Shown here one piece after another: positions 27,956 to 62,859 of a stretch of DNA of 64,000 nucleotides. The DNA lies in NCBI RefSeq assembly GCF_003918875.1, contig NW_025766980.1:3596001-3660000 (forward strand), written 5' to 3'. The notes under the pieces are model-generated. The model was not told the DNA's origin. It was given only the letters and a program-made list of their open reading frames with translations, and did no database searches. The stretch's first letter is position 1; every line of letters starts with the position of its first letter. Source of the DNA: Haliotis rubra (taxonomy: Eukaryota). The position numbers and the translations under genes were made by a program.

Positions 27956-28444
27956 TTATTTCCCCACTATCTCAGGGGACGATCCGAGATTCAACTCACA
28001 CAGAAAAAATTCTCTGTTTTGACAGTCATTGTCGTCCCACCGGTAGGCCTCTTTCTTGTACAACATTAGACAGAGCTGGGTGACAGCCTTATTTGGGTCC
28101 CCAGGAGCCCACCAGGTATTGGCGATCCGGGTATTTTCAAATCCCCACTGCCACTCGCTGGGTACCAGGTATGTCAAACCACCGATCCAGACACCGTCAG
28201 TCGTTATAGTAGAGTTTTCTCGTATGAGATAACCTTCAAGGAATGTCTGTTCCGAAGCCGTCTTCACGCGAGCCAGGTGGGAGCCTATAGCCTGACAGTA
28301 CACAGCCGCCTCTGCCCACGATGCTTTGACACGGATGAGACTGTAGCAGGAGTCGTCGTGGCGCAGGAAGCCGCTCGGACAGTCACTACAAACCACGTTC
28401 ATAACTGCCAAGAGGACAGTGATACTTATTGATGAGTAAAACAT
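27956..28444 (-). CDS. Perlucin-like C-type lectin, copy 3 (162 aa, DPN/WDD)
   Basis: Signal peptide, CTLD cysteines, WIGG, WDD; ends PEIVGK. Confidence 0.92.
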   Translation of the reverse strand: MFYSSISITVLLAVMNVVCSDCPSGFLRHDDSCYSLIRVKASWAEAAVYCQAIGSHLARVKTASEQTFLEGYLIRENSTITTDGVWIGGLTYLVPSEWQWGFENTRIANTWWAPGDPNKAVTQLCLMLYKKEAYRWDDNDCQNREFFLCELNLGSSPEIVGK

Positions 28445-30710: not shown

Positions 30711-30876
30711 GAAACACGTTATTTATCAGGGTAATCTAAAGCTTCATTTAATAGATGAAGCCTTAGTCGGACCCTTCCCATTACCATCTACTACCCCTCT
30801 ACAAAGCTTTATTTCACAAATAAGACTTTAGTTGGGGACCCTTACTCATTACCTCTACTATAGTGGTATCTTGCCT

Positions 30877-31865
30877 CTATGTCGTGTTGACAGGAGGTAA
30901 TACTGTGTCATACGGTACAATCAATAATTCTTCTCTTACAAACCCTCTGCCTGGCCCATCCCTCAAGAAATACAAGGTAGGTTCGCCGGCTTTGATGTCA
31001 ACTTTATCTATGTTGTAAGTTTTGACTGACCATATAGGATCAGTGGCTCGTTTCCGGCTATCCCCCTCGTGTTCCCCGGCTGGTATAGATACCTCACTAG
31101 GGACCCTATCTGGTATCTGTTTCTCCTTCCCACGCAATGGAGCAGCCGACTCTGCTATTATTGATTTTAATTTTATAGCGCGTCTGCCGGCTTCTTACCA
31201 GTGAGTCGTGTGATTTCATGATTTATGGCAGACACCACCTTAGGGAGCCGTTCAACCCATTCAGTCGATCGTTTTTCTGGGTTGGTCATTTCTCTCGCAT
31301 ACTGATACCCGAATAAACGCTCAGCCAAAGTCCTATTAAATCTCTCAACTATGGCTTGGCTGCGATGGGCTCCAACCGTGCCACGTCTCACTCGTACTTT
31401 GTGCTTAGTCAGCAACTGTGATACAACACCCATGAACTCCCGACCAGGGTCAACTTGGAGCTCTGTTGGCCACGTTAGTGGACTGCGTTTGTATATGCGT
31501 TCAATGGCTTGAGCTACCTGGGCAGAATCTTTCGTGGTCAATGGTTCAGCTTCCTTATACCGGCTGGCTACATCCACGATAGTCAGGGCATACTTGTAGG
31601 TTTTACGTCTCACCCTGTCGTGAGGTAGGAACAGCAGGTCTGCTTGGTGAACGTTATTAGGTATGTTAATACCAAACTTCCTTCTAGGCACATAGCGTGG
31701 TGGTGGTAAATATATCTGCCAAAGTGCTTGTTTTTCAAGCCATGTTTTGACCTCCTCCGGGGATACTCGAGCCATTTTAGCTAGCTTATCTACAGCGCTA
31801 GCTCCTTTCCAATACCCACGCGGACTATAGTAAATAGCCTCAAACTTTTTCTGGTTCCGTGACAT
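30877..31865 (-). CDS. Retroviral-type (rve/DDE) integrase; one frameshift near 31178
   Basis: HQADL, VDPGREF and VERFNRTL catalytic motifs; continues as ADAIKLKSIIAES...GKEKQIPD after a 2-nt GC indel. Confidence 0.92.
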
Positions 31866-31883
31866 GTCACTATTTATTTATAC

Positions 31884-34800
31884 CTATGTTCTTGGTTCAA
31901 TTTTCTCATGCCCGTACGCGTACGTGTTTATCCCATCAATGGCTATCCAACGTTTGGTATCCATAGGGGATAATGATGTTTTATTTATAGTCAGCCCGTA
32001 TATCCTATGCCCATCACTTCTAAGTGTGTTCATTTTATGTTTAAAGGTACGGGTCTTGAACAGGGCTTCCTTGAATCTGGCGTGTTTGATGTGTTGTTTC
32101 ACCACGTATTTTTTTACACCCTTAGCTTTCCGGATCTCACCATTGTCGGCCTTCAGTATGGAGTACATCTTAGGCCTCAACCCTATGTACTCGGCTATGG
32201 GCGTGCCAGCACACTCGTCCTTCATCTTACCTAGGACCTTTTTATTCACCGTGCTGTGTATGGTATGGTCCTTGGGATAGTCGCTGGTGTCGTACAAATC
32301 GAGGTGTTTTTTCATGTCCTCGTACACGTCCTCGGTTCGAATCTCCATCAGCAGGGAATCCGTGTCAGTGTATAGCACTTCACACCTGTCATCGTACTGT
32401 TTCTTCAGCTCGTTGTAGTAAAAGTCGTACATCAAGTGTTTGGATAAATCGAGGATGCTCATCCCAACGTAAACAGGCCGGTTTAATATTATGTGACTTT
32501 TCTTCATGTGTATGGCAGCCAGGTCGTTATCGAATATCTTACTACGGTTGAATGCAGGGTTAGCGATCAGCTTCCTGAGTTTTTCCTCCTCATTCGACCG
32601 AACCAGCTTCACGTCCACGCGTTTCCTCAGGTTCTCCATCGTCTTACCGAATACCGAGTTGTTCATGAGCTTATAGAAGTTTTTCTCAAAGTCACTGGTG
32701 GCAAGCTTTCGGAGGTCCGTGTTCATTCTGATGTAAGGCTCCATCCATGGGCTCTGGTTGAACTTCAGCACTCTGTGTATTTTGGTCAGTTTCATACCCA
32801 ACGACAGGTACAGCTGCAGGTTGCGATAGTGAACTATGTATTTGGTCTTATTCATTAAGTTAGGCACGAGTTTTTCAACGCCCGTCACCCGCCTATCTAA
32901 CAAGTTATGTTGGTATTCAGACATCCAGTCTGGGTTAACCCTCATACGTTCGGGAGCTAGCGGATAGCTGTTGTGTGATTCGTGTAATGCTTTGGGATAC
33001 TCCAAGTCAACCTCGAGGATATAACCTTTGTTCGAATCCGGCGCGATGCTCATAATATCGAAATCGGATGATACCCATTTGAATCCCCCCTGTTGGTAGA
33101 TACTGACTCATGGCCCATCCGTACAGGTTATTTGCGTCGAGATAGAGAATGTGATTGGTTGGTTTGCTAGGGTCGTAGCCATTCACGTATTGATTATTTG
33201 CTTTAGCGTATCGTTTGGTTGCCATGGAGATCCCACCTCGCAAACCTTTCTCAATGAACAGGTGCATGTCATAATCAGTAAGCAATTCCAACTTAACTCC
33301 GGTCTTTTTAAGCAAGGCATCCCACGACAGGCCTGGGCTGGTGTAATACCATGCTGGATCTAGTTTATACTGCTTGATACATGTCCTCCTAAATGTCTCA
33401 AACACGTCGGCTAATAGTAGTACATCCATCTTCAAGTACAGATCGTGATAGTCACCCAGGTTTTTTACAACCAAGTTTATTCCATACATTAATAGCGTAC
33501 GAGTAATCGTCTTCGGATATTTCCGAGTCTGTCAGATTGCTGTAAAATTCTCTGATGGGAGGTAGTCTGGTCTCGGCGAACTTAGTCCAACTATCCATGT
33601 ACTCATAGGGATACACACCCTTCCTCATAAGCAGAGATCTAGTCTCGGCGTCTGTGTATCGATCGGTGATAGGGAAGGTATCGTTGGCTTTGATCAGGCT
33701 GGCTAATGACGACAATAGAAATTGACACGAGTCAATGAACCTAAGTCCGTCTAAGCTGAAAGAGAGATATTTCTCCATGTTGTTGGGGATGCACGTTATA
33801 TTACCATCGATTTTCGCGATGGCCTGCATGATTAAGTGAGAGTCGTACCCTCTCAAGTTGTGAAAGACAACGGGAATGTTTATTGTTTTAGGGTTGATTC
33901 TAAGCTTGAGGTTACACTCGTTATGAGCGGCGCCTCTATACTTACCGGTTATGTGACAGTGATCTCTCACCGAATCACCGTTCAGTGGTGAGTCACACAC
34001 GTGACAGTTAATGCTACGGGAGTGAGCTAACCTGTCGGCTTGGGTCATACGCATGGGAGCGATTCTATGCAACTTTTCCCTAATAATTTCTTCTTCCTCC
34101 TTCAAACACTTTAGAAACCTTTCAACCGCGTCAGGACCCCTGTACACTACGGGAGATTTCGTTTCACCGTCACAACGGACGACTATGTATCCAAATCCAC
34201 ATGCTTCATGCTCTTGTGTTTTGTATGTGAAGCTCTCACCTGTGGGTAGAGCATTGGGGGTCCCCCCAATATCAACTGGTTTGACCAAGGCTTCAAAGTC
34301 GGCGTATATAATATAAGGAACAGACATTTGGTGCTTGTGGTTGTAGAATTTTAGGATATTGTCACCTTCCTCGGGCATGTCGATGCGTATAGCCGTCTGT
34401 CCCACACCTTGACAATACTCCTGGTGGGATTCTAATAAATCAGCTCGGCTGAAACCGTGCAGACATCGCATACAAAAGTGTTTTTTCCCATTGTGTTTCG
34501 ACTGATCGTGCAACAACCGACTGAAATGTTTTATCCACGTGTAGTGATACTTTTCACCTCGTTGGATCATGAATATATTGATAACACGTTTCCCCACCAA
34601 CGAGCTGAGCCTGTGTATTATTGTTGTGTCGTCTTCGTGTCCAAAGACATTTATAGCTAGATTATTCTGTTTTTCTACTTTAGTGATCTGAGATATGGTG
34701 GTTGGTTCATCTATACCATCCCAGTTGAGTCCATCGTCTTGGGGATAACTAGAAGGCCTGTTCGAATTAGTGTCAGCTGGAAACAAGGCTGATCTGATAG

Positions 34801-35290
34801 CTAATCTCAAGCAATCGTTTCCTCTATTCTTAACGTTTACTATGGCCTGTTTTTTCTTATAGTAGGGAGGCAAGTCTAGGTATGACCCGCCTTTGAACGG
34901 CACGTAGTTAGCTATGTCTAGATAGACAATATCGATTTTATCTACAGCCCACCCGGATCCCAAGTGTGTGTAGCGTTCTAGGTATTCCTGTATCTGCTGA
35001 AAACTAGTATCGATCGATGTGTTTATAGTCTCTATCTGGGTCACGACCTCTTGTACACCTCGGAAGTAAGGCTGAACGTACTCGGTAACATCCCCTACGT
35101 TCTTTTCGAGTGTCATTTTAATTGTGATTTGAAATTTGATACTTCCAAGACTGGCTAGTTCCTGTTTTATTTTATCATCTATCAGGGGCTTAATATCTGA
35201 GACATCTATATTCCTATCAACGCGCATGCGCCAGCCTCTTAAATACTTACCTACAGCGCGCTCAGTGCGTACGAACTGTATAGTATTCAT
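31884..35290 (-). CDS. Protein-primed family B DNA polymerase; two homopolymer frameshifts (~33465, ~33088)
   Basis: Exonuclease motifs YADFE and FHNLRGYD; inserted endonuclease-VII-like RDHCHITGKYRGAAHNECNL; KGVYPYEY; polymerase motifs DANNLYGWAM, KLMNNSVFGK, YTDTDS. Confidence 0.95.
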
Positions 35291-35348
35291 AATTGCGTAC
35301 ACACCTAAGGAATTAATGTCTAATTGGGCCGCCGTAAATGTAAAAAAA

Positions 35349-35650
35349 TCATATATCCTCTCCGTTACCCCAATGAACTATTTTTAGATGGGCTGTTTCG
35401 ATCCAGTGCTCACACTGTTTGATATAGTATTCCTTGAAGTTTAGCAGGTATTCCGATATACTTGTAAAACAATCTATCTGGTGTTGAGTCGTGATGGTCC
35501 CCACACATACGAAGGGACGAGTATACTTAACACCATCTTTAATCCATACCATTTTCAATATTACCTGAAATCTGAAGTTTAGTTTATCTTTGAGTATGTT
35601 TTTTTTACCTGAGATTCTATGTCTTCACTGGGATCAAGTTCCACAAACAT
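35349..35650 (-). CDS. Small viral ORF resembling the N-terminal domain of the adjacent pPolB (frameshift in a T-run near 35600)
   Basis: FQVILKM..YTRPF..FTSISEYL versus pPolB FQITIKM..YVQPYF..FQQIQEYL. Confidence 0.5.
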
Positions 35651-35728
35651 ATCTATACGTAAGTGTGTAATAATCTCTAATTGGGGTCTATCTTGAGAAA
35701 TCGCCTACGTTCTTTTATGTAGGCCTTT

Positions 35729-35929
35729 TTATTCTCGTAGATGAGGTGATGTCTGACTACGTTCGCCCCCGTGAGCTTTACATAAACAATAGTGTCCTTT
35801 GACTCCTATACCACACACAGAACACGAGTAGTTGGGACTTCCCATGTGGAAATAACAGTACCCATGAGTACCGCATACCCTACCACAGGTCTCGGTCTTC
35901 CCCATAAGTATGTATTCACATCTATACAT
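35729..35929 (-). CDS. Small Cys/His-rich (zinc-binding) viral protein
   Basis: C-x9-C-x3-C-x5-C-x2-H and C-x2-C-x10-C-x2-H patterns; AT-rich motif directly before the ATG. Confidence 0.6.
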   Translation of the reverse strand: MYRCEYILMGKTETCGRVCGTHGYCYFHMGSPNYSCSVCGIGVKGHYCLCKAHGGERSQTSPHLRE

Positions 35930-35950
35930 GTTAACATATTTATATGTGTA

Positions 35951-36374
35951 TTAGTCTAATTGCTTCACAACCAAAGCAGTCGCCGCTATACCCAGCGCTA
36001 TGAAGGTCAGTTCACGGTCCATTTGTCCCTTGGATGGTGTGTAGTACTGAGCGAGTGTTGGCTTCTGTAGTGGCTCCAATCGTTTACCAGTTAATAAGTA
36101 GTATTGTCTCGCTGCGTCGTCGACATCGTGGAATGTTTGAACGGCATGGTTTTCACGCCTGAGTTGTTCGTTAATGTAATCGATCCGCTGGAGGCGTTGT
36201 TTAGCGTACTCGGCCTGTGCTATTTGTAAGTTCTCAATAGCGAGATCGTGCCGCTTCCTCTCCGCCTGTATTTCAGCCGCGTGTGACTCTCGTAGTTTAG
36301 AAAGAGAAATTACTCCCGGAAAATGCCAGGGCATTCACTAACGCACCACCGACCATCATAGCAATCGTAGCCAT
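35951..36374 (-). CDS. Viral coiled-coil protein with hydrophobic N- and C-termini (frameshifted)
   Basis: MATIAMMVGGALVNALAFSG joined to SKLRESHAAEIQAERKRHDLAIENLQ...FIALGIAATALVV. Confidence 0.7.
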
Positions 36375-36382
36375 CCTTATAT

Positions 36383-36610
36383 TTATTTCATAATATCTTC
36401 AGGTATTATTCCTTGTTTTACTAGGATGTCTTTTGTGGCCATCGCCATACCAAGGTTCATTATTAGCATACCCATATCCTGCAGGTTGAAATCTAGCTTG
36501 ATAGTTGGTTGTTTAAGCACCATTTTGGTCAACCGAGCGTATCCTACGGCTAGACTGGCGACCACGGTGGCGTGGTATGCGTCGTTGACGAACGTTTTCC
36601 CCTCAGACAT
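36383..36610 (-). CDS. Small hydrophobic viral protein (75 aa)
   Basis: Clean ORF with two hydrophobic helices; TATACATAATG start context. Confidence 0.7.
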   Translation of the reverse strand: MSEGKTFVNDAYHATVVASLAVGYARLTKMVLKQPTIKLDFNLQDMGMLIMNLGMAMATKDILVKQGIIPEDIMK

Positions 36611-36947
36611 TATGTATATGATATAAAAATATATATTTTATTGCATGATATGCGGGTTGACCTCTAATTGTGGGGGAGGGTTTCCCTCCCTGTGTCGTGT
36701 ATATAACCACGAGATAGCCACGGCAGCAGTTGCGCATACAACCAACAAGAGTCGCTCCCGGGTGAGTCACCCTGATAATTTTATGTTGGTTACACCACCG
36801 TTTTTTACCGGCAGCTACTCTCTTAGGATTCTTCTGCCTGGTGACTGTGGGAGGGTTCACAGTCACCTGTGAGGGGGTCTCCTCCAGTTGGGGTGGGGTC
36901 TCCTCTGAAGGGGTCTCCTCCTTGGGGGTCTCCTGTGCAGCATCCAT
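36603..36947 (-). CDS. Viral protein with EETP repeats and basic motif KNPKRVAAGKK (probably frameshifted)
   Basis: Acidic Pro-rich repeats followed by a basic patch; same strand and abutting its neighbours. Confidence 0.55.
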   Translation of the reverse strand: MDAAQETPKEETPSEETPPQLEETPSQVTVNPPTVTRQKNPKRVAAGKKRWCNQHKIIRVTHPGATLVGCMRNCCRGYLVVIYTTQGGKPSPTIRGQPAYHAIKYIFLYHIHNV

Positions 36948-37405
36948 CTATACTATTATTATTATTTTTCCTCTCAAATTGACAATGCTTTGCCGTGATA
37001 ATCGCCGCCGTCACCGGGGCTAACAACATACCGTATTTGTGGTACAGCTCGCAGCTAATAGAGCTCAAGGCGTGTTCGATAAAAGGGTCTTTCTCTAAGT
37101 CTTCCCACAGGTAAAGTCGACGCTCCGGGGGGGATGGGAAGGAAGTATGACGCAATACCAGTGTATATCTGGGTCATAGCCGATCCTATTGTCTTTGTCA
37201 TCTCTGAACCTAGTCTAGTCTCGTATTTAGCGTACAGTTTATCGATTTCTTCGGCTGACATTTTGTGAATTTTATCCGGAGTGTACTCCCCAAAGTAATG
37301 TTTGGCTTTGCCACCAACAGCCAACGCCACCAGTTTCTCTCGCTTATCATCATCCACCTGTATTTGGGGTACCAACAGTTGCTCTAGCAACTCCTCACAC
37401 TCCAT
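36940..37405 (-). CDS. Hypothetical viral protein (frameshift in a G7 run near 37130; 3' end approximate)
   Basis: MECEELLEQLL...YFLPIP joins PERRLYLWEDLEKDPFIEHAL...AKHC. Confidence 0.65.
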
Positions 37406-37526
37406 CCTATAATATGATAAGTAAGTTTTAGTTTTAACAATATAATATACGATATAAGCGAAACACAGAGAAATGAAAGGTTAAGTTGCACACGACGAGC
37501 ACTTCAAATACCATAACTATAACTAA

Positions 37527-37618
37527 ATGCTAAGTATTTATTTAAGCATTGCTAAGCATTGCTAAGCTTTACTAAGCATTGTTAAAATTTACTAAGCATT
37601 GCTAAGCATTGCTAAGCT
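37527..37618. repeat. 10-bp tandem repeat (TGCTAAGCAT-like, about 9 units) inside the virus
   Basis: ...TAAGCATTGCTAAGCATTGCTAAGCTTTACTAAGCATT... Confidence 0.85.
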
Positions 37619-38266
37619 AAAACACACTATAGGCTACTGGTTGGTCTGTCTTAAGCACGAGCTTAGCGTGTTTAGTTTCAGCTAGCTGTTTCTTCACCCG
37701 TTCCCCGTTCTAATTTGCTCATCACATCGTTCTCTCTCAAACACTCTTCGAACGAATCCCTGTCCTTGCAGTGAAATAAGGCAACCCATCGCGTCTGCTC
37801 CCTGAGGTCTTTCAACACCGAGTTGAACTTCTGCGTTAGCACCCAGACGCTGTGCTTTGCGTGTCGGCCTGAAAATGCCAGGTACGATAGCATATCTCTC
37901 TTTTTTGTTATCTCGCGATTAGCGCTGCAGTCGTCCAGTATGAACAACGTCGACTCCCCTTTAAATTTCATATGGTAAGCTTTCAACCAGTCCTGTAGAC
38001 GTGGCCCCGGATCGACTCTGTGTACGTCAGGGTCCGTCATAACCCAAGGTCTTTCCGTGTACGTTTTATTCATGCTCAGAGTAGGACACATGATAACGAT
38101 GTGGTCGAACACATCCCTGTAGTACCCCCTCCAACATATCCAACACGAAAACGGTCTTCCCACAGCCAGTCTGCCCGCACACTATGGCGCAGTGTGGGTC
38201 GCGGGGCAAATCAGTAAATGGCTTGCCGCCAGGCAAATCAGTAAATGGCTTGCACGAATCTCCCAT
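37617..38266 (-). CDS. A32/FtsK-HerA-type genome-packaging ATPase (two frameshifts)
   Basis: Walker A GQTGCGKT, Walker B LFILDD, GRHAKHSVWVLTQ arginine-finger/sensor motif. Confidence 0.9.
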
Positions 38267-39496
38267 TGTCTATATTAAGTTGCGCATCCATAATAACGTA
38301 CAGATATAATTTCAACTTGCCAGCGGGTTGAGCCTTCTTGGTAATCTGGATAGTAATTCCTTCGCTACCATTGTCTATTCTACGGCCGCTACCGTGTAGT
38401 TTATCGTCATCCGTGGATCGCATGTCCAACCACAGCGCGTACTTGTTAGTTAAGTATTCACCGATTTGCACGGAGGATAGGTCCAGGTCTTTGGCTATAT
38501 ATGGATGTTTGCTCGGCAGCTTTTTTATCTCATCCCACTGCTGGTACGCACGCATACCATGACTAAACAGCTGGTTGGGCACGCCCTCGATGGTCACTTC
38601 CACCTTTTCGATCTCTGGGTTGAAAAACTTCTCGCTGTCCCTCCGGAACGGCTCGTAATCCTCCACAGGGACTACCAGGATGCCTTTCATCGATCGCGCC
38701 GGCACGTTCAGGTTGATATTCCACACAGTGTCGCTCTTATCCCGCACGATGGATCTATGCCTCAGTATACGATCGTACAGGATGGCTACATTACCCGAGT
38801 ACTGGTTTCGAACCTGCCTTGCCAGCTCGGGTTAGTGACCATGTCGAACTCCAGAGAGATGTTGTCTATGGTATAACTGGCCTCATCACCGTTCGGCGTA
38901 CGCACTACTTTGCTGTAGTCGTTAAACGTGAGCTCGTATTCAAGCCTATCACCCAGCGCGGCTTGGTAAAACGGCGCGTGTTCCGTGAGCAACTCGAAGT
39001 CGAGCGGCACGCAGAACCGGTTCCCGTACGCTTGAGCGATGGCCTTTTCACCGTCCGATAGCTTGTCTAACTGGTCTGCCGTGAAGGCATACCCAATGCG
39101 CGACCTGGTCGATTTACTGATACCTTGGTACACGTCATTGACGCGTTCTCCCTCGCTTTTCCAGAGGTCCTTGTAGCAGTGAAAGACGTCGCTGTCGTCG
39201 ATGCTCAGCACCTCGTTACCGGTGATCTTGATGGTGGTTTTCTTGATAATAGCTCGACCTACGTTCCGCACTAGCTCGCGTTTGTCGTTGTCGGAGGTCA
39301 ACGTGATGTTGAACGCCAGTCGAACAGTGCCTGGTACAATGAGGTCATTCGCGCCAAGGTTTGGAAATCTAACCAGCAGCGTTTGATTCTGGTCTATCTT
39401 GCTGGGATTGTTGGTGATGGTCACCGACTGACGCACGGCTTTGACACCTAGTGGCTCTCTCGATCTTCTGAAAGGATCTAGTTTTCTACCGTACAT
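38238..39496 (-). CDS. Major capsid protein (probable double jelly-roll, ~420 aa; frameshift near 38830)
   Basis: Size, beta-rich pattern (LLVRFP, LAFNITL, FCVPLDF, LEYELTFN, NISLEFD, LYLYVIMDA) and position directly upstream of the ATPase. Confidence 0.78.
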
Positions 39497-39535
39497 TGTT
39501 ATATAAATGAAATATATAAGTTTTAATACTAAATA

Positions 39536-40653
39536 ATGGCCGAGTATATCCCTATGGAGGATATGTGGGATAATAGTGCCCTGGATGATGTTTCATCCTC
39601 ATTAAGTGGTGAACTCGTACAGCCAACTGTCAACGATTATTACAACGCAGTTGAAAATAGAAGACATCAAACCGTTGGGGAGGGACTATTCCAAGTTTAC
39701 AGTCGATAATAAGGGCACGTTGCGATTGAAGGCTTACCCGGAGATCGATCTCATGAATAAGCGCACGAGAGAACCGCTTGCCTTATCAACACTCACCAGT
39801 CGTCATGGTAGTAACTTTATCCGTGATGAACTAGGCTTCGTAGATTACGGCGGCGCGCGACCTAAACTTCCTCCTAAGACCGTCCAAGATCTGCAAGCAG
39901 CCAGAGTCAATACTAGGAACGCTAAAGAAACGTCAGACAGTATCGAAAAAATATTGGCTACGTATCATGATAAACCCTTGCCGGGTCTCGAATTTCCTCT
40001 GAGAGAACTGCGAGGCTTAGACAAGCCTTGAAACATGTACGTGGAGAACTCGTTAACAACATGGGTAAACTGAACGAAGTCGATGAGCGCATCGCTCGCG
40101 AGAAAATAAAACTAACCGAAACTGAAGACGATGATATGAAACGTCGCATCGAGGAGAGAATAAAAAAACTTGGAAGACGAGAGACGGACTCGGTTGGAAT
40201 CCGCTTCCTCGAACCGGGAAGCCCTCCGATCACAGATCAGTAGAGTACGGGAAACCATCGATCGAGTCCTAAATGAAGACACCACGCTAGCTGACAGGAT
40301 CCGAATCCTGTTCCGTGAACAAGGCATCACCATCGCCAGCATTCTGACTGCATTGGGCTTCATCATATCTACCCTGGTGGTGTCACTTAGTGGGGGTACC
40401 CCCACACCCCCAAGTGGTGGCGGTGGTGGCACAGGTGGTGTTAAAGAGTGGATTAAAAAACTAGGGGGAAACTCTAGCTAAACTGGCTGGTAAGGCCGCC
40501 GAAGCCCTGCCTGGCATCCTGGGTAGCATCGTCTCGTGGTTGCTGAGTGTTTTAGCTAAAACTGCTACGTGGCTCAGTCAAAACCTGTGGGCAGCCATCG
40601 TCGCAGTAGCTGGTTTGGTGTACGTAGCGGCTAAGGAATTTTTAACCAAATGA
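39536..40653 (+). CDS. Viral coiled-coil/membrane protein (several frameshifts)
   Basis: Coiled coil followed by hydrophobic ITIASILTALGFIISTLVV, a Gly linker, amphipathic LPGILGSIVSWLLSVLA and a C-terminal hydrophobic helix. Confidence 0.65.
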
Positions 40654-41778
40654 GCCCCAAAGCCACCCCACCAACCACCATGGCTGTTTTACGATCGATG
40701 TGCTGTGAACCCACAGTGGGTGCAGACTGGGGCTGTAGGTGTGTGTGTTGAACCCTAGGTTCCGGGGATGGCGCCACTATACCCGTTTCACCGGTCGTGG
40801 GTGGTGGGACGTGGGGGACGTTGACATCGAGGTTGACGCCCAACTTTTGACCCGCCGTGGCTACAATTATTTCGTTGTTGTAGCCCACCACTTTTTTTAC
40901 TCTCAGTTGCATATCGCTCGGAGCCATGTACAGTCCCACGTCGAACACGTAGTCGACTTTCGACCTGGCGTATTCCAACACGTCTTGGTAGCGTTTGATG
41001 GCACTCGGGAGATCAACTGGAGCATTGATAGCATCCTCAACGTTGACAACGAACTGTTTCTGGCGTCGTAAGCAGTCCCTTACCTAGGATATATTGGAAC
41101 GCGTTTGCGTCTGCGCACCAACAGTGCCCACGTACGTTCGAATCGAGTCATTCAAGCGTTCGGTGCCGGCACGAGTATACCCTTTCGATTCCAACATGAA
41201 TTTTTCCAGTCACCACCCTGCTCGAACCTCCAAACTCGGTAATCCTTGCTGTCGTCGAATGCCATATAACGGTCATCCCACTCGTTTGTTGTGACGTAAT
41301 GATTCGCATTGTATCACCACCCCATTCTTTCAACTTCTCGCTGGCTTCCACGAGGGCATGTTGTGAACGATAGGAATACCCAATCCGTGGTTCGGTCCGG
41401 CAAACGCCAATCCGTTTTAGTGTCGATTCGAATTCGTTGCAAATACGTTCGTAGGCCCGTCTATCGTATTGGTTGTTTACTGCATTCCACGCTTTTTCCT
41501 GTGAGGTGGGGCGCTGATCTCTTTGAGGATACGCCTGACCTGGTAGTACACGTGAAACGTGAACACAGACTGACTCAGCGGTCCACGCCGAGTGTCGGAT
41601 ACACCACACCCGTTGTAGCGCACCACACGGCGAAGTTGAGTTGATTCTGCCAGAACTGCATCGGGTTGTTGAACCAAGCGTGCACTGTCTTAACGTTAGT
41701 CACCGAAAACTTATACTTATCGAACACATCTATGAACTGGGCGTCGAAATACAATCCATCAGCGACCACGATCTTCAT
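40631..41778 (-). CDS. Hypothetical viral protein with C-terminal transmembrane anchor (several frameshifts)
   Basis: Fragments FWQNQLNFAVWCATTG, FHVYYQVRRIL, RLNDSIRTYV, RYQDVLEYARSKVDY and terminal AMVVGGVALGLIWL are collinear on one strand. Confidence 0.65.
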
Positions 41779-41797
41779 GTTTTAAAACTATTATATA

Positions 41798-42466
41798 ATG
41801 AGTTTATATAACATGTACATAACACTCCCAGGAATAACGAGCGGCGAGGCCGTTCAGCTGACGCACGCGATCGATAACACGTCGGGTCAACTCGAAATAG
41901 CACTGTGCGATATAACCTACCTACCACGATGGACTAACATCAACGCTAGCAACAATAAACTGTTCGTAGGTGGCGCTAGCAACAAGATAATTGATGGTTA
42001 CTACAGCGTGTGCTCTCTAAGCGACGAGGTATTCAAACCATTGGGAGCCGAACTCAAGATGAACGACTCAAACGGCACAGTGGTGTTAATCAACAACGGA
42101 AGAAACTCCTTGCGGCTAGGCCGGCCATTGGCTAGAACACTCGGTATGCAGCCTGACGAGGTAAAACCAACGACTACAGTCACAGGCGCGAAGTTACCCG
42201 ACTTAGTACCGTACCGAGAGCTGTGCATTCATCTCAACCAGGTTAGCACAACGGACAATATTCAAGGAGGCCACCCTTCCACTATACTTAGAGCAGTGCC
42301 GGTTAAAACGGAGAAATACAACGACGGCAGAACCGAGTCGTTTTCAACGTGGCAATATAAGAGGTTAACCCAGGGCAACATCCCTGAGCTGATAATATCG
42401 GTGTTAGATATAAATCATAATCTCGTGAATATAGGATACCTCAGCGTAACGCTGCACATAAAATGA
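41798..42466 (+). CDS. Minor capsid protein (penton, single jelly-roll; 222 aa)
   Basis: EIALCDITY, IIDGYYS, ELCIH, STILRAVPV, YKRL, IISVLD and terminal VTLHIK pattern typical of Polinton pentons. Confidence 0.75.
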   Translation: MSLYNMYITLPGITSGEAVQLTHAIDNTSGQLEIALCDITYLPRWTNINASNNKLFVGGASNKIIDGYYSVCSLSDEVFKPLGAELKMNDSNGTVVLINNGRNSLRLGRPLARTLGMQPDEVKPTTTVTGAKLPDLVPYRELCIHLNQVSTTDNIQGGHPSTILRAVPVKTEKYNDGRTESFSTWQYKRLTQGNIPELIISVLDINHNLVNIGYLSVTLHIK

Positions 42467-43383
42467 CCAGCGCACAAGGTCCCGGAATGAAGTTGAAAAA
42501 ATGCACCAATGTGGGGATCTCCGATCTCGGGGACACACGCGGATTCGACGACCCCGGAGTAGATGGTAAAGTGTACGCCTTGCAACTTAAAAACAGCATT
42601 TATAAACGCGTTGAAGTTTCCGGTGGTACTAGCAACCTAAGCGATATAGTAGATACCTCAAGAGCGGCAGTCAACACTAAGTACACCCTTGTCACCACCG
42701 GGGATGATAACTGGATGATATACCCATACGGGGGCAAACTGTTCGACTTAACCGATGTTGAGAGCACTACCGTCGCCCGAAACAAACCATATACGCTCGT
42801 TTTCACCGATGATGACAAGTGGGTGTTATTACCGGGTAAAGTCGACTGGTTTCTCAATATTAGGCTCGGCTCCCCCTACGTGTTTACGGATAATAAAGAC
42901 AACCACCTAAACAAAGTCGTGAACAACGGAACCCTGCTCGTGGCTTACATCCCGACTCAGAGACGTAGCGTAGTCATCAGCCCACTCGCCAGTATGGCAG
43001 CCCACATGCTATCGAGTAAAGCGGGGATGCAAAACGTGGTATTGCAGTTGGTGTCTGAATTCGAAGGTGTGGTCAGGATCCTGGAGAGTCTACCGGCGAA
43101 CTCAACACTGGTCATCCAAGTCTACCTAGGGGAACCATCGCGGAATGATGTAGAGATCGTGAAGGGGGTCAAACTCCGGTGGGGGAAACAACAACAGTAT
43201 CACGTTTGCAACGTTTACGTGCGGGTGGGTGTCGACTCCAAAACCAGTCTGCAGGGTGTCACCGTGGTCGTGGAAGACACTATATCACTAACCAAGATAT
43301 TCCTACCCGACAACATACACTTCATGGGGGTGAAGTGCACCCCTGAACTATTATCAGAAAACCAGTTGGAAATTATCTCGTAA
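42463..43383 (+). CDS. Putative fibre/spike protein 1 (306 aa)
   Basis: Overlaps the penton stop codon; three (I/L)xD(L/I)xD(T/V) shaft-like repeats followed by a beta-rich head. Confidence 0.6.
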   Translation: MTSAQGPGMKLKKCTNVGISDLGDTRGFDDPGVDGKVYALQLKNSIYKRVEVSGGTSNLSDIVDTSRAAVNTKYTLVTTGDDNWMIYPYGGKLFDLTDVESTTVARNKPYTLVFTDDDKWVLLPGKVDWFLNIRLGSPYVFTDNKDNHLNKVVNNGTLLVAYIPTQRRSVVISPLASMAAHMLSSKAGMQNVVLQLVSEFEGVVRILESLPANSTLVIQVYLGEPSRNDVEIVKGVKLRWGKQQQYHVCNVYVRVGVDSKTSLQGVTVVVEDTISLTKIFLPDNIHFMGVKCTPELLSENQLEIIS

Positions 43384-43393
43384 TAATATAGCA

Positions 43394-44120
43394 ATGTCTT
43401 GGATTCGCCCCAACACTACGATTAACGACTTAGGGGACACGGAGGGATTCGATCAGCCTGGTGAGGAAGACACCTTATACATCCTGCACTTGAAAGACAA
43501 CGTGTATAGGCGGGTGTCGTTATCAGATTTTAAAGAGCCTGAATGGTTAGTCAACTTAACCCTCACCTCACCTTATATCTCCCTGAAACAAAAGAATACT
43601 ATCTCCGAGATTAGGAACAACGGTATGATTATAGGATCGTTCGTTCCGGAATCTAGTGTACAAGTCATACCAATACCAGACCACTCGGGCAACATGTTAG
43701 CTTCAGACAGTGGGAGGGTAAAGATAGAGATCAAATTACTCGATTACCAAGAGGTTTTTAGAAATGTTGCGGAAAACTTCACATTCATCATAGACGTCTA
43801 TCTCGGAGATATAAGTTTGACTAGTAGTTATATTAGCATTATAGATGATATGGTGATAGGTTGGGAAGCCAGGTGTAATAACCAACGTTGTTGTATTATT
43901 AAGGTATCAGGAAACGACCCTGTACCAACCCTTGATGGGGTTCGTCTCTTTAATGGACGTAGAGCTAAGACCCCGCTTTTTTTACACGCACGTTAATCTA
44001 AGTATTATCGGCTTTAAGTACATTAATCGAAGGTTAAATGAAACCCAATTAAAATATATTATGGGATTGAGCTATATCCCTGAATTAGTACCAGAACACT
44101 AGTTGGAAATTATATCGTAA
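43394..44120 (+). CDS. Putative fibre/spike protein 2 (paralogue; frameshifted 3' part)
   Basis: INDLGDTEGFDQPG, WLVNLTLTSPYI and IRNNG shared with neighbours; 3' end TTGGAAATTATATCGTAA mirrors the LEIIS* end of fibre 1. Confidence 0.6.
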
Positions 44121-44133
44121 TAGTATTATAGAA

Positions 44134-44851
44134 ATGTCTTGGCTTCACCCCAACACTACGCTTAACGATCTAGGGGACACGGAGGGATTTGATAAGCCTG
44201 GTCATAAAAACACCTCATACGTCCTATTATTTAACAACGGTGTGTACATACGGCAGGACCTGGCAGTCTTTAAAGAACCTAAATGGGTGATCAACGTGAC
44301 CACCACCGCACCTTATATCTCACTAGACAAAGATGGTTATGTCTCTGAAATTAGGAACAACGGTACCTTGCTCACGTCTTTCATTCCAACTGAAAGGATG
44401 ATAGTTTCTAACTCTGAATATTGGCCTAGGGACACCCTGTTAATTTCAGCCAGGAAGTCTCAGTTAATAGCCACCCACCACCATCATTCCATAATAGGGG
44501 TTAGGGGTATGGAAACAAACTCCACACTCATCGTAGAAGTCGGTTACAAGGATAAGTTTGATTTGGATGACCTTGACCCATCCCCAAACTTGGAACTTTT
44601 ACCTGGTGTAACAATACGTTGGGGTAACGACCCCTTAACATCAGGTTTTTTTATCTTGCATATTCGTGATACGATTGGGGGACTCCCAACAGGGATTACT
44701 ACCCCCCATAATAAACTGCTATGATGTTGAGATAGACCAAAAGTTACCTATTGACCCTTCCCGTATCTACACATATGAGAATCTAAGTTTTATAAGCCTC
44801 AGGTACGTTGGCCAACTATTAAGTGATGCCCAATTAAAATATCTTTTGTAA
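44134..44851 (+). CDS. Putative fibre/spike protein 3 (paralogue; frameshift near 44705)
   Basis: LNDLGDTEGFDKPG, WVINVTTTAPYI, IRNNGTLL, VTIRWG. Confidence 0.6.
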
Positions 44852-44864
44852 TATATATTATAGG

Positions 44865-45471
44865 ATGGGACTGTATCCAGGCATAGATGAAGTAGTAAAG
44901 ACCCTGGAAACCGTAGACGGGTTTCGCTTGAGACAATTATGTGATGTAAGACGCCAACTAGAACAAGATCGTGACAAGCGGGAAAGCACTATATAAAAAT
45001 ACCATAGAGCTTTCAATGCCGTGGATGGGGCCGATACTACCCTTATGGCAACCAGCATGGGACTAGGGGTGGCAGGTGTTGGGTTGTTGACAACCATCGT
45101 GGCTGCACCTATAGTGTTGGGACTCGAAATAACGGCTGGGGTGTCAGGGTTGGCTGGATTGGTATTTAAGTTTGTTTCTCGCAGACTGCATCGTAAGGCA
45201 TTGAAGCATGATGAGATCAGAGTTCTGGCTGAAGCAAAGCTTAACACAATAGATGATCATATTTCCACGGCACTCACTGACAACAAAATCTCGGAGGAGG
45301 AGTTTCGTTTAATCCTCTCTGAACTCGCAAAATATGATAAAATGAAACAAGAAATCGGTCCAAGTCTCGTAAAAGTCTGCTACTATCAGCGAGGATGAGA
45401 AAAAAAAAGTACATAGAACAGGGGGGTACAAAAAGCCCAGCAAGCCTTTATTACCAACACCAAAGACATAG
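44865..45471 (+). CDS. Viral membrane-active/coiled-coil protein (frameshifted; 3' end approximate)
   Basis: FRLRQLCDV..., Gly-rich hydrophobic hairpin GLGVAGVGLLTTIVAAPIVLGL..AGVSGLAG, then KHDEIRVLAEAKLNTI...ISEEEF. Confidence 0.7.
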
Positions 45472-45849
45472 ATAAACGAACTACTTGATGGATGGCGAAC
45501 TGTTTCATACCGTATGAGGTCAACACGTGACATACCAGAATTCCCTCCGGGGCCTCGGCTCCATTATTTTAAGGAATGGAGAGACCCTCGAACATTACCC
45601 TCTACATAAAACTTGGTTTTCCTTCATCTATACAACTTCTAAAATGCCTCTCAAAGAAGGTATATCATGGGCTTGGCACATGCAATTCCTGCACATGTTG
45701 CGGAGGCAGGTCACATGACTGTCTTCTATAACATTTGCAAATGCCAGGGGCCCCAGTGCACATCATGTCAGGGAAGTTTAACGTGTTGTTCTAATCCACA
45801 GGTTTCTTTACGACTAAACACTTCAGCCAGAGTTCGGACGTTTGTAGTT

Positions 45850-47060
45850 CCTGCGACAATCGTATAAAGTCTTGGATATCTATAAAACAATTGAATTCAG
45901 AATGCCAGGCGGGTTTCAGAGAAGGATGCTCAGCCATCGACCATATATTGAGACTGCATAGTGTCATACTTGGGTAAAAGGGTATGTTCTAATGCAAATT
46001 TGATTTCAAGAACGCATTTTATACTGTCCATAGTTCCAAATTGTTATCAGGTGTAAATAGGAATCGATTTTACGCTTCTACAAAACGTGCACTAATGCTA
46101 CAGCTTCTGTAAAAACAAATAAGTGGGAAATGACGGACATATTATAACCACCTTCACTGGTGTAAGACAAGGTTCTGTTTCGTCGCCTGTCCTCTTGATG
46201 TTATACACTGAAGAACTTGTAAAGAAAATACTGTCGAATGATACAAGAGATATACTTAAAACACGATGAAACTATTCTGTGTCACTTTTTACCTACGTTG
46301 TGGCTATCTTTGCAGACTCTGTGGTTCTGTTACAACGTAAAATAGATGTTTTATATGAGTATTGTTTAAAGTGGGGGTTAACAGTAAATAGTGATTAAAC
46401 GAAATAACAGTTTCTGAGAACGGAGGTAGATTATCCAACAGTTCTCGATAAAGAACATCAAAAATGGTTTTTAAACCGTACAGAAAGTGAAGTAGTATTA
46501 TATCATAAATATATAGGTATAGTTTCTTGTATAAATATGTTCTCAAGAGCCTTGAGGCATTTTCTATGTAAGGAAAAATAATTTCTCATGTCACAAAAGA
46601 ATTTTTAACCAAATGTACAGAAATGCCAATCAAATCGTCATTTAGATTATCCGTCGGAATAATGCTACCGATCTTGGCGTATGGTTCAGACGTTTTGGGC
46701 ATACATAACAATAAAACAATAGAAAAAGTACATTTCTGTAAATGTCTATTACATGCAGTATACAAAGCTGCGAATAAAGTCATACTAGCCGAATGAGGCA
46801 GTTCTCCATGATTTATGAACGCCGATACTAGTGTATTATCGTATTGGATAAGATTAATAAGACAACCATGAACAAGATATTCCAGAAACTGTTATGATGC
46901 ACTGAAAAGACGAAATGGCACGGGCGACATAAACCTGGTATCGTTTGTACGTAATTTACTAAGTTTGGGGCGTGTATGACATGTACAAGATGTTTGTACA
47001 TCTACATATAGACTATGATGTACAGATATCTATCAACATGAACGGGTCAACGAAATGCGA
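45850..47060 (+). pseudogene. Decayed LINE reverse transcriptase and C-terminal region
   Basis: Translates to QAGFREGCSAIDHI, DFKNAF, GVRQGSVSSP, LPILAYGS; many stops. Confidence 0.85.

Positions 47061-62774: not shown

Positions 62775-62859
<85 letters not shown>

What the first reader, a model, noticed from the sequence alone, without database searches (positions are those of the whole stretch)
30715..45850. Near-complete endogenous Polinton/adintovirus-like DNA virus inside a mollusc lectin cluster
Seen: about 18 intronless, abutting ORFs on ~15 kb with no SINEs, in a window otherwise full of them. They include an rve integrase, pPolB with an endonuclease-VII-like insert, an A32-type ATPase, and probable major and minor capsid proteins. 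Established: this gene set defines Polintons/Mavericks (polintoviruses). Inference: it is a young provirus with an unusual complement. I found no adenain-type cysteine protease, but there are about five membrane-protein genes and a fibre array, which may mark a poorly described lineage.
Basis: partly seen in the sequence, partly recalled or inferred. Interest (0 to 1): 0.85.

Follow-up and report, generated by a model that had tools for sequence, protein, structure and literature searches.

The report
Decayed Maverick/Polinton provirus in abalone genome
A roughly 14.5-kb virus-like Maverick/Polinton element, with polymerase, integrase, packaging ATPase and two capsid genes but several broken reading frames and no recognisable ends, sits between two lectin genes of the blacklip abalone; such insertions are very common in mollusc genomes, so it is a fairly ordinary find.

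Summary
Window 30.9-45.4 kb is a gene-dense, SINE-free block: 88% lies in open frames of at least 100 codons, against 29% outside, and GC is 45.9% against 40.3%. It sits between two single-exon C-type lectin genes. An exact protein look-up places the window in Haliotis rubra (blacklip abalone), a gastropod.

- **Core genes:** the block encodes an rve integrase, a protein-primed family-B polymerase and an A32-like ATPase.
- **Major capsid protein:** its family models as a double jelly roll, with Foldseek E about 1e-14 to PBCV-1 and SGIV capsids.
- **Penton:** the 222-aa protein's low-confidence model best matches the mavirus penton.

The refuting test for the capsid genes therefore failed, and Maverick/Polinton identity is supported.

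- The endonuclease-VII-like domain lies in front of the polymerase core, not inside it, and is common in marine-invertebrate relatives.
- Only two ORFs are clearly membrane proteins.
- No terminal inverted repeats or target duplication were found.

The copy is defective as assembled. The polymerase has two frameshifts and the capsid gene one. The ATPase has at least one, one paralogue has one, and several accessory genes look broken.

No adenain-type protease was detected, but published surveys found none in about a quarter of Polintons. The array of three paralogues is real; its function is untested.

Verdict: a new member of a known kind, of modest interest.

The parts
30877..31865 (-). Integrase gene region. 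It holds a 230-aa ATG ORF (31173-31865) with an rve core, plus a further open frame downstream in another frame. Whether that frame belongs to the gene is untested.
   Evidence: Pfam rve E 4.8e-10, 40 bits, above the cut-off. The D, D and E catalytic residues can be read in the translation. The downstream frame has no Pfam hit.
31884..35302 (-). [quoted passage not shown] Domain order: N-terminal region of about 400 aa with a C2H2-like stretch, then an endonuclease-VII-like His-Me finger, then the exonuclease-polymerase core.
   Evidence: DNA_pol_B_2 and Endonuclease_7 hits. At least 3919 homologues, the best about 58% identical. tblastn with six long relatives gives 3-4 HSPs (3 for five of the six), always in 3 frames, with 0 stops. 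Domain order was read from intact relative P0181.
35951..36334 (-). 127-aa ATG ORF of unknown function, with a coiled-coil-like middle and a hydrophobic C-terminal tail (borderline membrane anchor).
   Evidence: Translation. Maximum 19-residue hydropathy is 1.57, just under the 1.6 threshold. No Pfam hit.
36383..37405 (-). Run of four overlapping open frames, each in a different frame from its neighbour. It is probably one or two accessory genes broken by frameshifts (inferred). It contains an acidic, proline-rich 15-nt tandem repeat.
   Evidence: ORF list. Tandem repeat at 36895-36934. No Pfam hit. No relatives were searched.
37543..37617 (.). 10-bp microsatellite, 7.5 copies, just downstream of the ATPase gene.
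   Evidence: Tandem Repeats Finder.
37678..38266 (-). A32/FtsK-type packaging ATPase gene, in two pieces in different frames (at least one frameshift). The C-terminal quarter of the Pfam profile is not covered.
   Evidence: Pox_A32 profile positions 9-39 fall in the Walker A piece (E 0.044; also AAA_25, AAA_22 and FtsK_SpoIIIE). Positions 96-172 fall in the 161-aa piece (E 5.7e-4). The two are colinear. Both hits are below Pfam's cut-off.
38238..39496 (-). Major capsid protein gene (double jelly-roll family), about 419 codons, broken by one frameshift and no in-frame stops.
   Evidence: 1094 family representatives. Both pieces are about 62% identical to intact relative P0016, covering 425 of its 430 residues in 2 frames. 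The family model gives Foldseek E about 1e-14 to PBCV-1 Vp54 and SGIV MCP and to viral DJR capsids in BFVD. Weak Capsid_N hit.
39536..40481 (+). Run of four overlapping open frames alternating between two frames. It is probably one accessory gene broken about three times (inferred). The last piece has a coiled coil, one clear transmembrane helix and a glycine-rich tail.
   Evidence: ORFs. Hydropathy 2.35 at residues 51-77 of the last piece. No Pfam hit.
40631..41083 (-). Open frame of unknown function with a hydrophobic C-terminus (borderline). It has no ATG at its start.
41148..41778 (-). Accessory gene of unknown function. An ATG ORF of 67 aa is followed by longer open frames in other frames, so it is probably broken (inferred).
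   Evidence: No Pfam hit.
41798..42466 (+). Penton (minor capsid, single jelly-roll) gene, an intact 222-aa ATG ORF.
   Evidence: 11 homologues. AlphaFold model is all-beta, pLDDT 57, pTM 0.55. The six best Foldseek PDB hits are all the mavirus penton (E 9e-6 to 5e-4), followed by the Sputnik penton (3j26_N) and a PBCV-1 capsid component (6ncl_a6, role not checked).
42463..43383 (+). Paralogue 1 of a three-gene family, an intact 306-aa ORF whose start overlaps the penton stop.
   Evidence: Only 3 database homologues. Alignment with the paralogues. No Pfam hit up to E 5, no credible PDB match and no profile match.
43394..44099 (+). Paralogue 2. It is a 200-aa ORF, and its homology to paralogue 1 continues to the end in a second frame (one frameshift).
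44134..44724 (+). Paralogue 3, a 196-aa ORF that lacks the C-terminal part of paralogue 1.
45021..45398 (+). Small membrane protein ORF with two adjacent hydrophobic helices near the N-terminus. It is the last recognisable gene of the element.
   Evidence: Hydropathy 2.22. No significant Pfam hit.
27956..28444 (-). Host C-type lectin gene (single exon, 162 aa), the left neighbour.
   Evidence: Lectin_C E 1.3e-10. The exact protein is on H. rubra contig QXJH01000031.1.
48205..48696 (-). Host C-type lectin gene (single exon, 163 aa), the right neighbour.
   Evidence: Lectin_C E 2.7e-13. Same NCBI contig.
45520..46800 (+). Decayed reverse-transcriptase (non-LTR retrotransposon-like) remnant abutting the right end of the element. 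It overlaps the last 330 bases of the finding's interval.
   Evidence: One weak RVT_1 hit at 46123-46266, E 5.7e-4. The rest is my reading of the translations, which is inference.

Best explanation
This is an endogenous copy of a Maverick/Polinton-type virus-like element (class Polintoviricetes in current usage). [quoted passage not shown]

In the established model for this class, a functional element works in three steps:
- It copies its linear dsDNA with the protein-primed polymerase.
- It packages the DNA with the A32-type ATPase into an icosahedral shell made of trimers of the double jelly-roll capsid protein, with penton pentamers at the vertices.
- It inserts into host DNA with the rve integrase.

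Shown here: all five of those genes are present, and the two capsid genes belong to the expected fold families.

Inferred:
- The copy, as assembled, can no longer do any of this. The polymerase, capsid, ATPase and several accessory genes are frameshifted, and no terminal repeats remain.
- It entered fairly recently. No stop codons have accumulated within the homologous stretches, and the catalytic motifs can still be read.
- The three paralogues just downstream of the penton gene are virion-surface (vertex-attached) proteins with a shared N-terminal anchoring module and variable distal parts.
For: - **Gene set:** rve; pPolB; A32-like ATPase in two colinear pieces.
- **MCP:** family of 1094 representatives; family model pLDDT 78 and pTM 0.80; Foldseek E 2e-14 to PBCV-1, SGIV, Sputnik and mavirus capsids, TM 0.54-0.62. 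The window's two pieces cover 425 of 430 residues of intact relative P0016 at 61% identity.
- **Penton:** model hits the mavirus penton, E 9e-6.
- **Host context:** lectin genes on both sides; exact match to H. rubra contig QXJH01000031.1 (PMC6774278); flank GC of 40.3% equals the genome's 40.5%.
- **Decay:** pPolB in 3 frames and MCP in 2 frames with 0 stops; ATPase in 2 pieces; paralogue 2 in 2 frames; no TIR or TSD.
- **Background:** mollusc genomes carry very many such regions. A preprint counts 107,631 dsDNA viral regions in bivalve genomes, 58.5% assigned to Orthopolintovirales (10.1101/2025.04.19.649669). Maverick-Polintons are reported from molluscs (10.64898/2026.06.19.733378).
- **Paralogues:** the N-terminal 35 residues are 46-60% identical against 24-32% for the rest, with 12 invariant residues there across 6 sequences.
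Against: - No adenain-type protease was found in any of 115 open frames of at least 50 codons.
- No terminal inverted repeats and no 6-bp target duplication were found, so integrase-mediated insertion is not demonstrated for this copy.
- The ATPase, Capsid_N, DNA_pol_B_2 and Endonuclease_7 Pfam hits on the window's own pieces are each below the curated cut-offs.
- The MCP model is of a relative (P0015) whose own C-terminal 160 residues are aberrant. The second jelly roll is therefore modelled with low confidence (pLDDT 34-68 over residues 270-400).
- The penton model is of low confidence (pLDDT 57).
- The frameshifts could in part be errors of an early Nanopore assembly that was polished only once with short reads.
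- The surface-protein role of the paralogues rests on gene position and conservation pattern alone.
Confidence: 0.85

Rival explanations
1. The provirus is essentially intact, and the frame breaks are indel errors of the assembly. It would then be a very recent insertion, possibly still expressed.
For: - The assembly was built from about 30x R9.4 Nanopore reads with two Racon rounds and one Pilon round. Repeated elements polish poorly.
- There are no in-frame stops inside 3.4 kb of polymerase homology or 1.26 kb of capsid homology.
- The catalytic motifs of the polymerase, integrase and His-Me finger, and the ATPase Walker B, can be read in the translations.
Against: - Breaks are spread over at least five genes, and the accessory regions alternate frames repeatedly.
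- No terminal inverted repeats exist, and indel errors cannot explain that.
- The ATPase lacks the last quarter of its profile.
- The closest capsid relative elsewhere is itself broken, so decay is usual in this family.
Confidence: 0.12
2. The element is a mosaic. It would combine a Polinton-type replication and integration module (pPolB plus rve) with a compact capsid module that is nearer to Polinton-like viruses (PLVs) than to classical Mavericks or adintoviruses. That would make it a distinct, protease-less lineage.
For: - The MCP family is only 410-430 aa. The adintovirus protein hit in BFVD is 663 aa, and a 'MELD virus' hit is 420 aa; both show 13% identity or less.
- No protease was found.
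- Module switching is reported as common across these groups (10.64898/2026.06.19.733378).
Against: - No phylogeny was made, and length alone is weak evidence.
- Foldseek ranks giant-virus, virophage and adintovirus capsids similarly, so it gives no specific affinity.
- About 26% of catalogued Polintons have no identifiable protease (PMC4028283).
Confidence: 0.2
3. The block is not integrated at all. It would be exogenous viral DNA, or DNA from another organism, joined to the lectin locus by mis-assembly.
For: GC content differs from the flanks. The viral ORFs are absent from the protein collection although the flanking lectins are present.
Against: - The element lies in the middle of a 3.7-Mb contig, with paralogous host lectin genes within 3 kb on each side.
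- It is decayed, as endogenous copies are.
- Relatives also sit on contigs of megabase size.
Confidence: 0.03

Closest known systems
Maverick/Polinton elements (Polintoviricetes; 'group 1' of the 2026 PLV framework preprint; Kapitonov & Jurka 2006; Krupovic et al. 2014, PMC4028283)
   Same: The element shares pPolB, rve integrase, A32/FtsK ATPase, a double jelly-roll MCP and a single jelly-roll penton on about 15 kb. It is integrated in an animal genome, and the penton gene lies a few genes from the MCP gene.
   Different: It has no detectable adenain-type protease, no terminal inverted repeats and no target duplication. Its MCP is compact, at about 420-430 aa. It also carries a family of three paralogous genes with almost no database relatives.
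Adintoviruses (Starrett et al. 2021, PMC8502044)
   Same: Both are animal-associated, with PolB, rve, an FtsK-type ATPase, hexon- and penton-like virion proteins and accessory membrane-active proteins. Degraded endogenous copies are common.
   Different: Adintoviruses were collected through their Adenain gene, which is not found here. The only adintovirus protein among the capsid fold hits is 663 aa and 12% identical. None of the named accessory genes (PLA2X, GasderminX, cupiennin) was detected by Pfam.
Polinton pPolB2 polymerases with HNH or VSR nuclease domains (Jeong et al. 2023, PMC10748475)
   Same: In both, a Polinton polymerase carries an extra nuclease domain. Mollusc Polintons, including one from another abalone (Haliotis rufescens, per the preprint version 10.1101/2023.08.22.554363), are in that study.
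   Different: Here the extra domain matches Pfam Endonuclease_7 (a His-Me finger) and sits directly before the polymerase core. Pfam found no Vsr domain. Whether this polymerase falls in their pPolB1 or pPolB2 group was not tested.
Mavirus virophage (penton 6g41/6g42; MCP 6g43)
   Same: The penton is the best structural match for the 222-aa protein. The mavirus MCP is also among the fold hits for the capsid family (rank 49). Mavirus likewise has pPolB and an rve integrase.
   Different: Mavirus is a virophage of a protist giant virus, and identity is about 10%. This is a fold-level relationship only.

Membership tests
Maverick/Polinton (Polintoviricetes) | [quoted passage not shown] | tested here: met
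   DNA_pol_B_2 hits on two pieces. At least 3919 homologues, many annotated 'DNA-directed DNA polymerase' or PF03175. Intact relative P0181 scores PF03175 at E 3e-13. The gene here carries two frameshifts.
Maverick/Polinton (Polintoviricetes) | Retrovirus-like rve integrase | tested here: met
   PF00665 E 4.8e-10, 40 bits against a cut-off of 32.6.
Maverick/Polinton (Polintoviricetes) | Double jelly-roll major capsid protein | tested here: met
   The family model gives Foldseek E about 1e-14 and TM 0.54-0.62 to PBCV-1, SGIV, Sputnik and mavirus MCPs. The window's pieces cover a 430-aa intact relative at 61% identity. Caveat: the model is of a relative, and its second jelly roll is of low confidence.
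Maverick/Polinton (Polintoviricetes) | Single jelly-roll penton (minor capsid) protein | tested here: met
   The six best PDB fold hits are the mavirus penton (E 9e-6 to 5e-4), followed by the Sputnik penton. The model confidence is low (pLDDT 57), so this support is moderate.
Maverick/Polinton (Polintoviricetes) | A32/FtsK-type genome-packaging ATPase | tested here: met
   Two adjacent pieces match colinear parts of Pox_A32: profile 9-39 at E 0.044 and 96-172 at E 5.7e-4. Each is below the Pfam cut-off. The gene lies next to the MCP gene. No PDB sequence hit.
Maverick/Polinton (Polintoviricetes) | Adenain-type cysteine maturation protease (present in most members, about 74% in PMC4028283) | tested here: not met
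   No peptidase family appears among the Pfam hits (E up to 0.1) of all 115 stop-to-stop frames of at least 50 codons, nor in the ORF scans. A very divergent or destroyed gene cannot be excluded.
Maverick/Polinton (Polintoviricetes) | Terminal inverted repeats | tested here: not met
   The repeat finder over 28-49 kb, blastn with word size 7 on the two end regions, and an ungapped scan all gave nothing above chance.
Maverick/Polinton (Polintoviricetes) | Short (6-bp) target-site duplication | tested here: inconclusive
   With no defined ends, any 4-8-bp match is chance. The best candidates had no inverted termini beside them.
Adintoviridae (as proposed by Starrett et al. 2021) | Adenain gene together with adintovirus-type virion proteins | tested here: not met
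   No Adenain was found. The capsid family shows only fold-level similarity, at 12% identity, to the one adintovirus entry returned.
Polinton-like viruses (PLV / Aquintoviricetes) | PLV-type MCP/mCP/ATPase module, usually without pPolB and rve | tested here: inconclusive
   pPolB and rve are present, which argues against membership. MCP affinity to PLV groups could not be tested, because no PLV profiles are available and no phylogeny was made.
pPolB2 group with VSR or HNH domain (Jeong et al. 2023) | VSR or PacI-like HNH domain in the polymerase, and pPolB2 phylogenetic position | tested here: inconclusive
   No Vsr hit was found. A His-Me (Endonuclease_7) domain is present before the core. 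Phylogenetic position was not tested.

The most novel reading that the evidence does not exclude
The element may represent a protease-less Maverick/Polinton lineage of marine molluscs. It would have a compact 420-430-aa capsid protein and an expandable array of vertex-attached host-recognition proteins. These would share a conserved N-terminal module of about 35 residues that docks on the penton, with divergent distal parts. The gene family currently has only three relatives in a 5.8-billion-protein collection.
Probability: 0.2. Interest if true: 0.5.

Novelty: new member of a known kind. Interest (0 to 1): 0.3.

Why it matters
The element adds an annotated example of a Maverick/Polinton insertion in an abalone of commercial importance. 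It also shows that its capsid family is large and mostly unnamed in public data.

The points of some interest are these:
- the missing maturation protease;
- the small paralogous gene array next to the penton gene, which has almost no known relatives;
- the position of the insertion inside an immune-type lectin gene array, which is probably incidental.

None of this changes the current picture of the class. Surveys already report that mollusc genomes hold very large numbers of such regions.

Tried and rejected
- **PDB sequence searches:** searches with the capsid N-piece, the penton, three polymerase pieces, the ATPase piece, and the capsid, paralogue and polymerase profiles gave nothing credible. 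The polyubiquitin rows for the paralogue profile have no stretch passing on its own, so I disregard them.
- **Profile-profile comparison:** the paralogue family against the penton and capsid families gave no relation.
- **Ends of the element:** a search for TIRs and TSDs gave nothing.
- **Shared motif near both ends:** a short motif lies near both ends in the same orientation. I set it aside because the pattern was derived from the data, and a local alignment of the two flanks does not exceed shuffles.
- **Insertion into a retrotransposon:** I considered that the element had inserted into a single non-LTR retrotransposon copy. Only one weak RVT_1 hit supports the right flank, and no tool result supports the left flank, so this stays a guess.
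- **Names for relatives:** a cluster look-up returned no names.
- P0016 would have been the better target.
- **Disclosure (joined residues):** while reading translations in my own working text, I twice set residues from neighbouring frames of an accessory gene side by side. I stopped when I noticed. These strings were not sent to any tool, saved or used.
- **Disclosure (frame bounds):** one search printed the bounds of open frames, as the ORF listing does, so that they could be passed to Pfam by reference.
Full report

Yes. Between about 30.9 and 45.4 kb the window changes character.
- Open frames of at least 100 codons, on either strand, cover 88% of 30877-45398 and 29% of the rest. No other stretch of that length in the window reaches this value.
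- GC rises to 45.9% from 40.3%.
- The repeat families that pepper the flanks have no copy inside. These are a tRNA-headed SINE (Rfam partial tRNA hits at 8698, 23597 and 26013) and its 60-155-nt body repeats.

The ORFs lie in four blocks of alternating strand:
- minus strand, 30877-39496;
- plus strand, 39536-40481;
- minus strand, 40631-41778;
- plus strand, 41798-45398.

**2. Where the window comes from**

The two neighbours are single-exon C-type lectin genes at 27956-28444(-) and 48205-48696(-), with Lectin_C E 1e-10 and 3e-13. They belong to a tandem array with further copies near 9.6, 11.2, 51.2, 54.0 and 56.8 kb.

The exact 162-aa lectin is encoded on NCBI contig QXJH01000031.1 of assembly GCA_003918875.1. 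I looked it up with 200-base flanks only, so no provirus DNA was fetched. That assembly is Haliotis rubra, the blacklip abalone. It was built from about 30x R9.4 Nanopore reads with two Racon rounds and one Pilon round, and its genome GC is 40.5% (PMC6774278). The host is therefore a gastropod mollusc.

The viral ORFs are not in the protein collection, although the lectins are.

**3. The conserved genes**

*Integrase.* The gene at 31173-31865(-) is a 230-aa ATG ORF with an rve core at E 4.8e-10, above Pfam's cut-off. An open frame in another frame follows it down to 30877. Whether that is a displaced C-terminus is untested.

*Polymerase.* The gene at 31884-35302(-) lies in three ORF pieces.
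- Pfam gives DNA_pol_B_2 on two pieces and Endonuclease_7 on one. Each hit is below the cut-off.
- The 616-aa piece has at least 3919 homologues, the best at 58% identity. They include proteins named 'DNA-directed DNA polymerase' from Elysia crispata, Oculina patagonica, Sycon ciliatum and Elysia marginata.
- tblastn with six long relatives gives 3-4 HSPs (3 for five of the six), always in 3 frames, with no stop inside. That means two frameshifts.
- The Exo I-II, Pol A-C, integrase D-D-E and ATPase Walker B motifs can be read in the translations. This is direct reading, with no tool score.

*Packaging ATPase.* The gene at 37678-38266(-) lies in two pieces in different frames.
- A Walker A piece hits AAA_25, AAA_22, FtsK_SpoIIIE and Pox_A32 positions 9-39.
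- A 161-aa piece hits Pox_A32 positions 96-172 at E 5.7e-4.
- The last quarter of the profile is not covered.

*Major capsid protein.* The gene at 38238-39496(-) lies in two pieces.
- An exhaustive HMMER search with the 236-aa N-piece found 1094 cluster representatives at E up to 1e-3. Of these, 499 reach 1e-10, and full-length members are 410-430 aa.
- The intact relative P0016 (430 aa) is 62% identical to the C-piece. Across both pieces, 425 of its 430 residues are covered at 61% mean identity in two frames with no stops. That means one frameshift.
- I modelled the family with P0015 as target before finding that P0015's own last 160 residues are unrelated to the family.
- The model has pLDDT 78 and pTM 0.80. 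Confidence is above 90 over residues 30-250 and low over 270-400.
- Foldseek returns only double jelly-roll capsid proteins. In the PDB these are PBCV-1 Vp54 and SGIV MCP (E about 2e-14, TM 0.54-0.62), then EhV, faustovirus, Sputnik and mavirus. In BFVD they are giant-virus, virophage, adomavirus, 'MELD virus' and adintovirus entries, all at 13% identity or less.
- Eight of 39 family members also hit Pfam Capsid_N.

*Penton.* The gene at 41798-42466(+) is an intact 222-aa ORF.
- It has eleven homologues.
- The model is all-beta but of low confidence, with pLDDT 57 and pTM 0.55.
- Even so, its six best PDB matches are all chains of the mavirus penton (E 9e-6 to 5e-4). The Sputnik penton and a PBCV-1 capsid component, whose role I did not check, follow.

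The finding's own refutation test, that these two products fail to model as jelly rolls, is therefore not met. The capsid assignment stands. It is strong for the MCP's first jelly roll and moderate for its second jelly roll and for the penton.

**4.

*The endonuclease-VII-like 'insert'.* It is not inside the polymerase.
- In intact relative P0181 it occupies residues 409-447, immediately before DNA_pol_B_2 at 459-894. The same order is seen in the window's piece.
- Its CxxC...DHxH..G..RG..H...N signature is invariant in 28 long relatives.
- PF02945 is precomputed for 36 of the best 120 hits.
- Extra nuclease domains (HNH, VSR) in Polinton polymerases, including those of molluscs, have been published (PMC10748475).

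The feature is real and conserved, but common.

*Membrane proteins.* A 19-residue hydropathy scan gives two clear cases, 40170-40481 and 45021-45398. It gives two borderline C-terminal tails, at 35951-36334 and 40631-40981. That is not five.

*Completeness.* I found no terminal inverted repeats and no target duplication, using three methods. The finding's last 330 bases (45520-45850) read as part of a decayed reverse-transcriptase remnant rather than part of the element. One weak RVT_1 hit at 46123-46266 supports this; the rest is my reading.

**5. State of decay (counts only)**

| Gene or region | Breaks |
|---|---|
| Polymerase | two frameshifts, no stops |
| Capsid | one frameshift, no stops |
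| ATPase | at least one frameshift, C-terminal part not found |
| Paralogue 2 | one frameshift |
| 36383-37405 | four overlapping open frames in changing frames; probably broken (inferred) |
| 39536-40481 | four overlapping open frames in changing frames; probably broken (inferred) |
| 41148-41778 | three overlapping open frames in changing frames; probably broken (inferred) |

I had no relatives with which to confirm the last three rows.

These ORFs are intact as assembled:
- the integrase core ORF;
- the 127-aa ORF;
- the penton;
- paralogue 1;
- paralogue 3, which may be truncated;
- the terminal membrane ORF.

About 4.7 kb of homology contains no stop codons. This suggests little neutral divergence since inactivation, so the insertion is probably recent. 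That is a rough inference from the expected rate of nonsense changes, not a measurement. Because the assembly is early Nanopore with one short-read polish, some breaks may be artefacts. The missing terminal repeats cannot be.

**6. The missing protease**

No peptidase family appears among Pfam hits at E up to 0.1 for all 115 stop-to-stop frames of at least 50 codons in 30700-45600. None appears in the ORF scans at E up to 1-5 either.

It is not unprecedented: a protease was identifiable in only 74% of catalogued Polintons (PMC4028283). The adintovirus survey was seeded with Adenain (PMC8502044), so it could not have found such elements.

**7. The three paralogues**

The ORFs at 42463-43383, 43394-43996 and 44134-44724 follow the penton gene on the same strand and are homologous at 29-34% identity overall.
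- The database holds only three relatives.
- Residues 16-50 are 46-60% identical among the paralogues, against 24-32% for the rest. Twelve residues there are invariant across all six sequences.
- There is no Pfam match below E 0.2 and no credible PDB or profile-profile match.

A conserved N-terminal module with divergent distal parts, encoded next to the vertex protein, is the pattern of virion-attached fibres or spikes. I think that is the most likely role, at perhaps 50%. It is inference only, and 'fibre' is not shown.

**8. Comparison with what is known**

The gene set, size and host place the element in the Maverick/Polinton class. Five of the defining genes are met. Protease and terminal repeats are not met, and the target duplication is undecidable.
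- It is not an adintovirus in the sense of Starrett et al., because it has no Adenain and only fold-level capsid similarity.
- It is not a typical PLV, because pPolB and rve are present.
- Mollusc genomes are known to be rich in such regions (10.1101/2025.04.19.649669; 10.64898/2026.06.19.733378).

I therefore rate it a new member of a known kind. It could still represent a separate protease-less lineage with a compact capsid protein and a novel vertex-protein family. I put that at about 20%. Phylogenies with published reference sets are needed to decide.

**9. Limits**

Synteny in relatives and copy number in the genome were therefore not examined. No phylogeny was made.

Noticed in passing
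window 1780-3850: A large minisatellite with a 31-nt period and more than 30 degenerate copies lies at the start of the window (families D1-D3).
   Followed up: no
window 61800-63000: C/A-rich degenerate tandem repeats with extreme GC skew, -0.58 in 62-63 kb (families D7, D10 and D11).
   Followed up: no
window 9100-12010; also 27956-28444, 48205-48696, about 51.2, 54.0 and 56.8 kb: A tandem array of single-exon C-type lectin genes. It includes a 1580-bp tandem duplicate that is 98-100% identical (families D4, D5, D8, D9, D15 and D16). The spacing between neighbouring copies is 1.6-3 kb where they lie side by side (the pair at 9.6/11.2 kb and the copies from 48.2 to 56.8 kb), but 19.8 kb across the element.
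   Followed up: partly
window 8698-8756, 23597-23655, 26013-26069: Partial tRNA matches (Rfam, 31-33 bits) that head a SINE-like repeat family. ARAGORN calls no tRNA gene (families D6 and D12).
   Followed up: partly
window 37543-37617: A 10-bp microsatellite with 7.5 copies lies inside the element, just downstream of the ATPase gene.
   Followed up: no
window 45520-46800: A decayed reverse-transcriptase remnant on the plus strand abuts the element's right end. It has one weak RVT_1 hit. The left flank at 30400-30830 also reads a little like retrotransposon ORF2 upstream sequence, but no tool supports that.
   Followed up: partly
window 30769-30791 and 45583-45605: A similar 23-nt motif lies near both ends of the element in the same, not inverted, orientation, with a second weaker copy near 30835 and a small hairpin at 30740-30763. 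It is not above chance in an unbiased alignment.
   Followed up: partly
protein P0008 (relative of 41798-42466): This penton relative is deposited as a protein of a 'Candidatus Thiodiazotropha' symbiont MAG from the clam Lucinoma aequizonata. It is probably host or virus DNA binned with the bacterium.
   Followed up: no
protein P0015 (relative of 38238-39496): The closest capsid relative lies on a 4.8-Mb contig. Its last 160 or so residues are unrelated to the family, so it too comes from a decayed endogenous copy.
   Followed up: partly
window 15493-15792 / 26412-26711 and 17203-17434 / 27082-27313: Dispersed repeats of 92-95% identity lie about 10-11 kb apart in the left flank. They may be a segmental duplication or transposon copies (families D17 and D20).
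   Followed up: no
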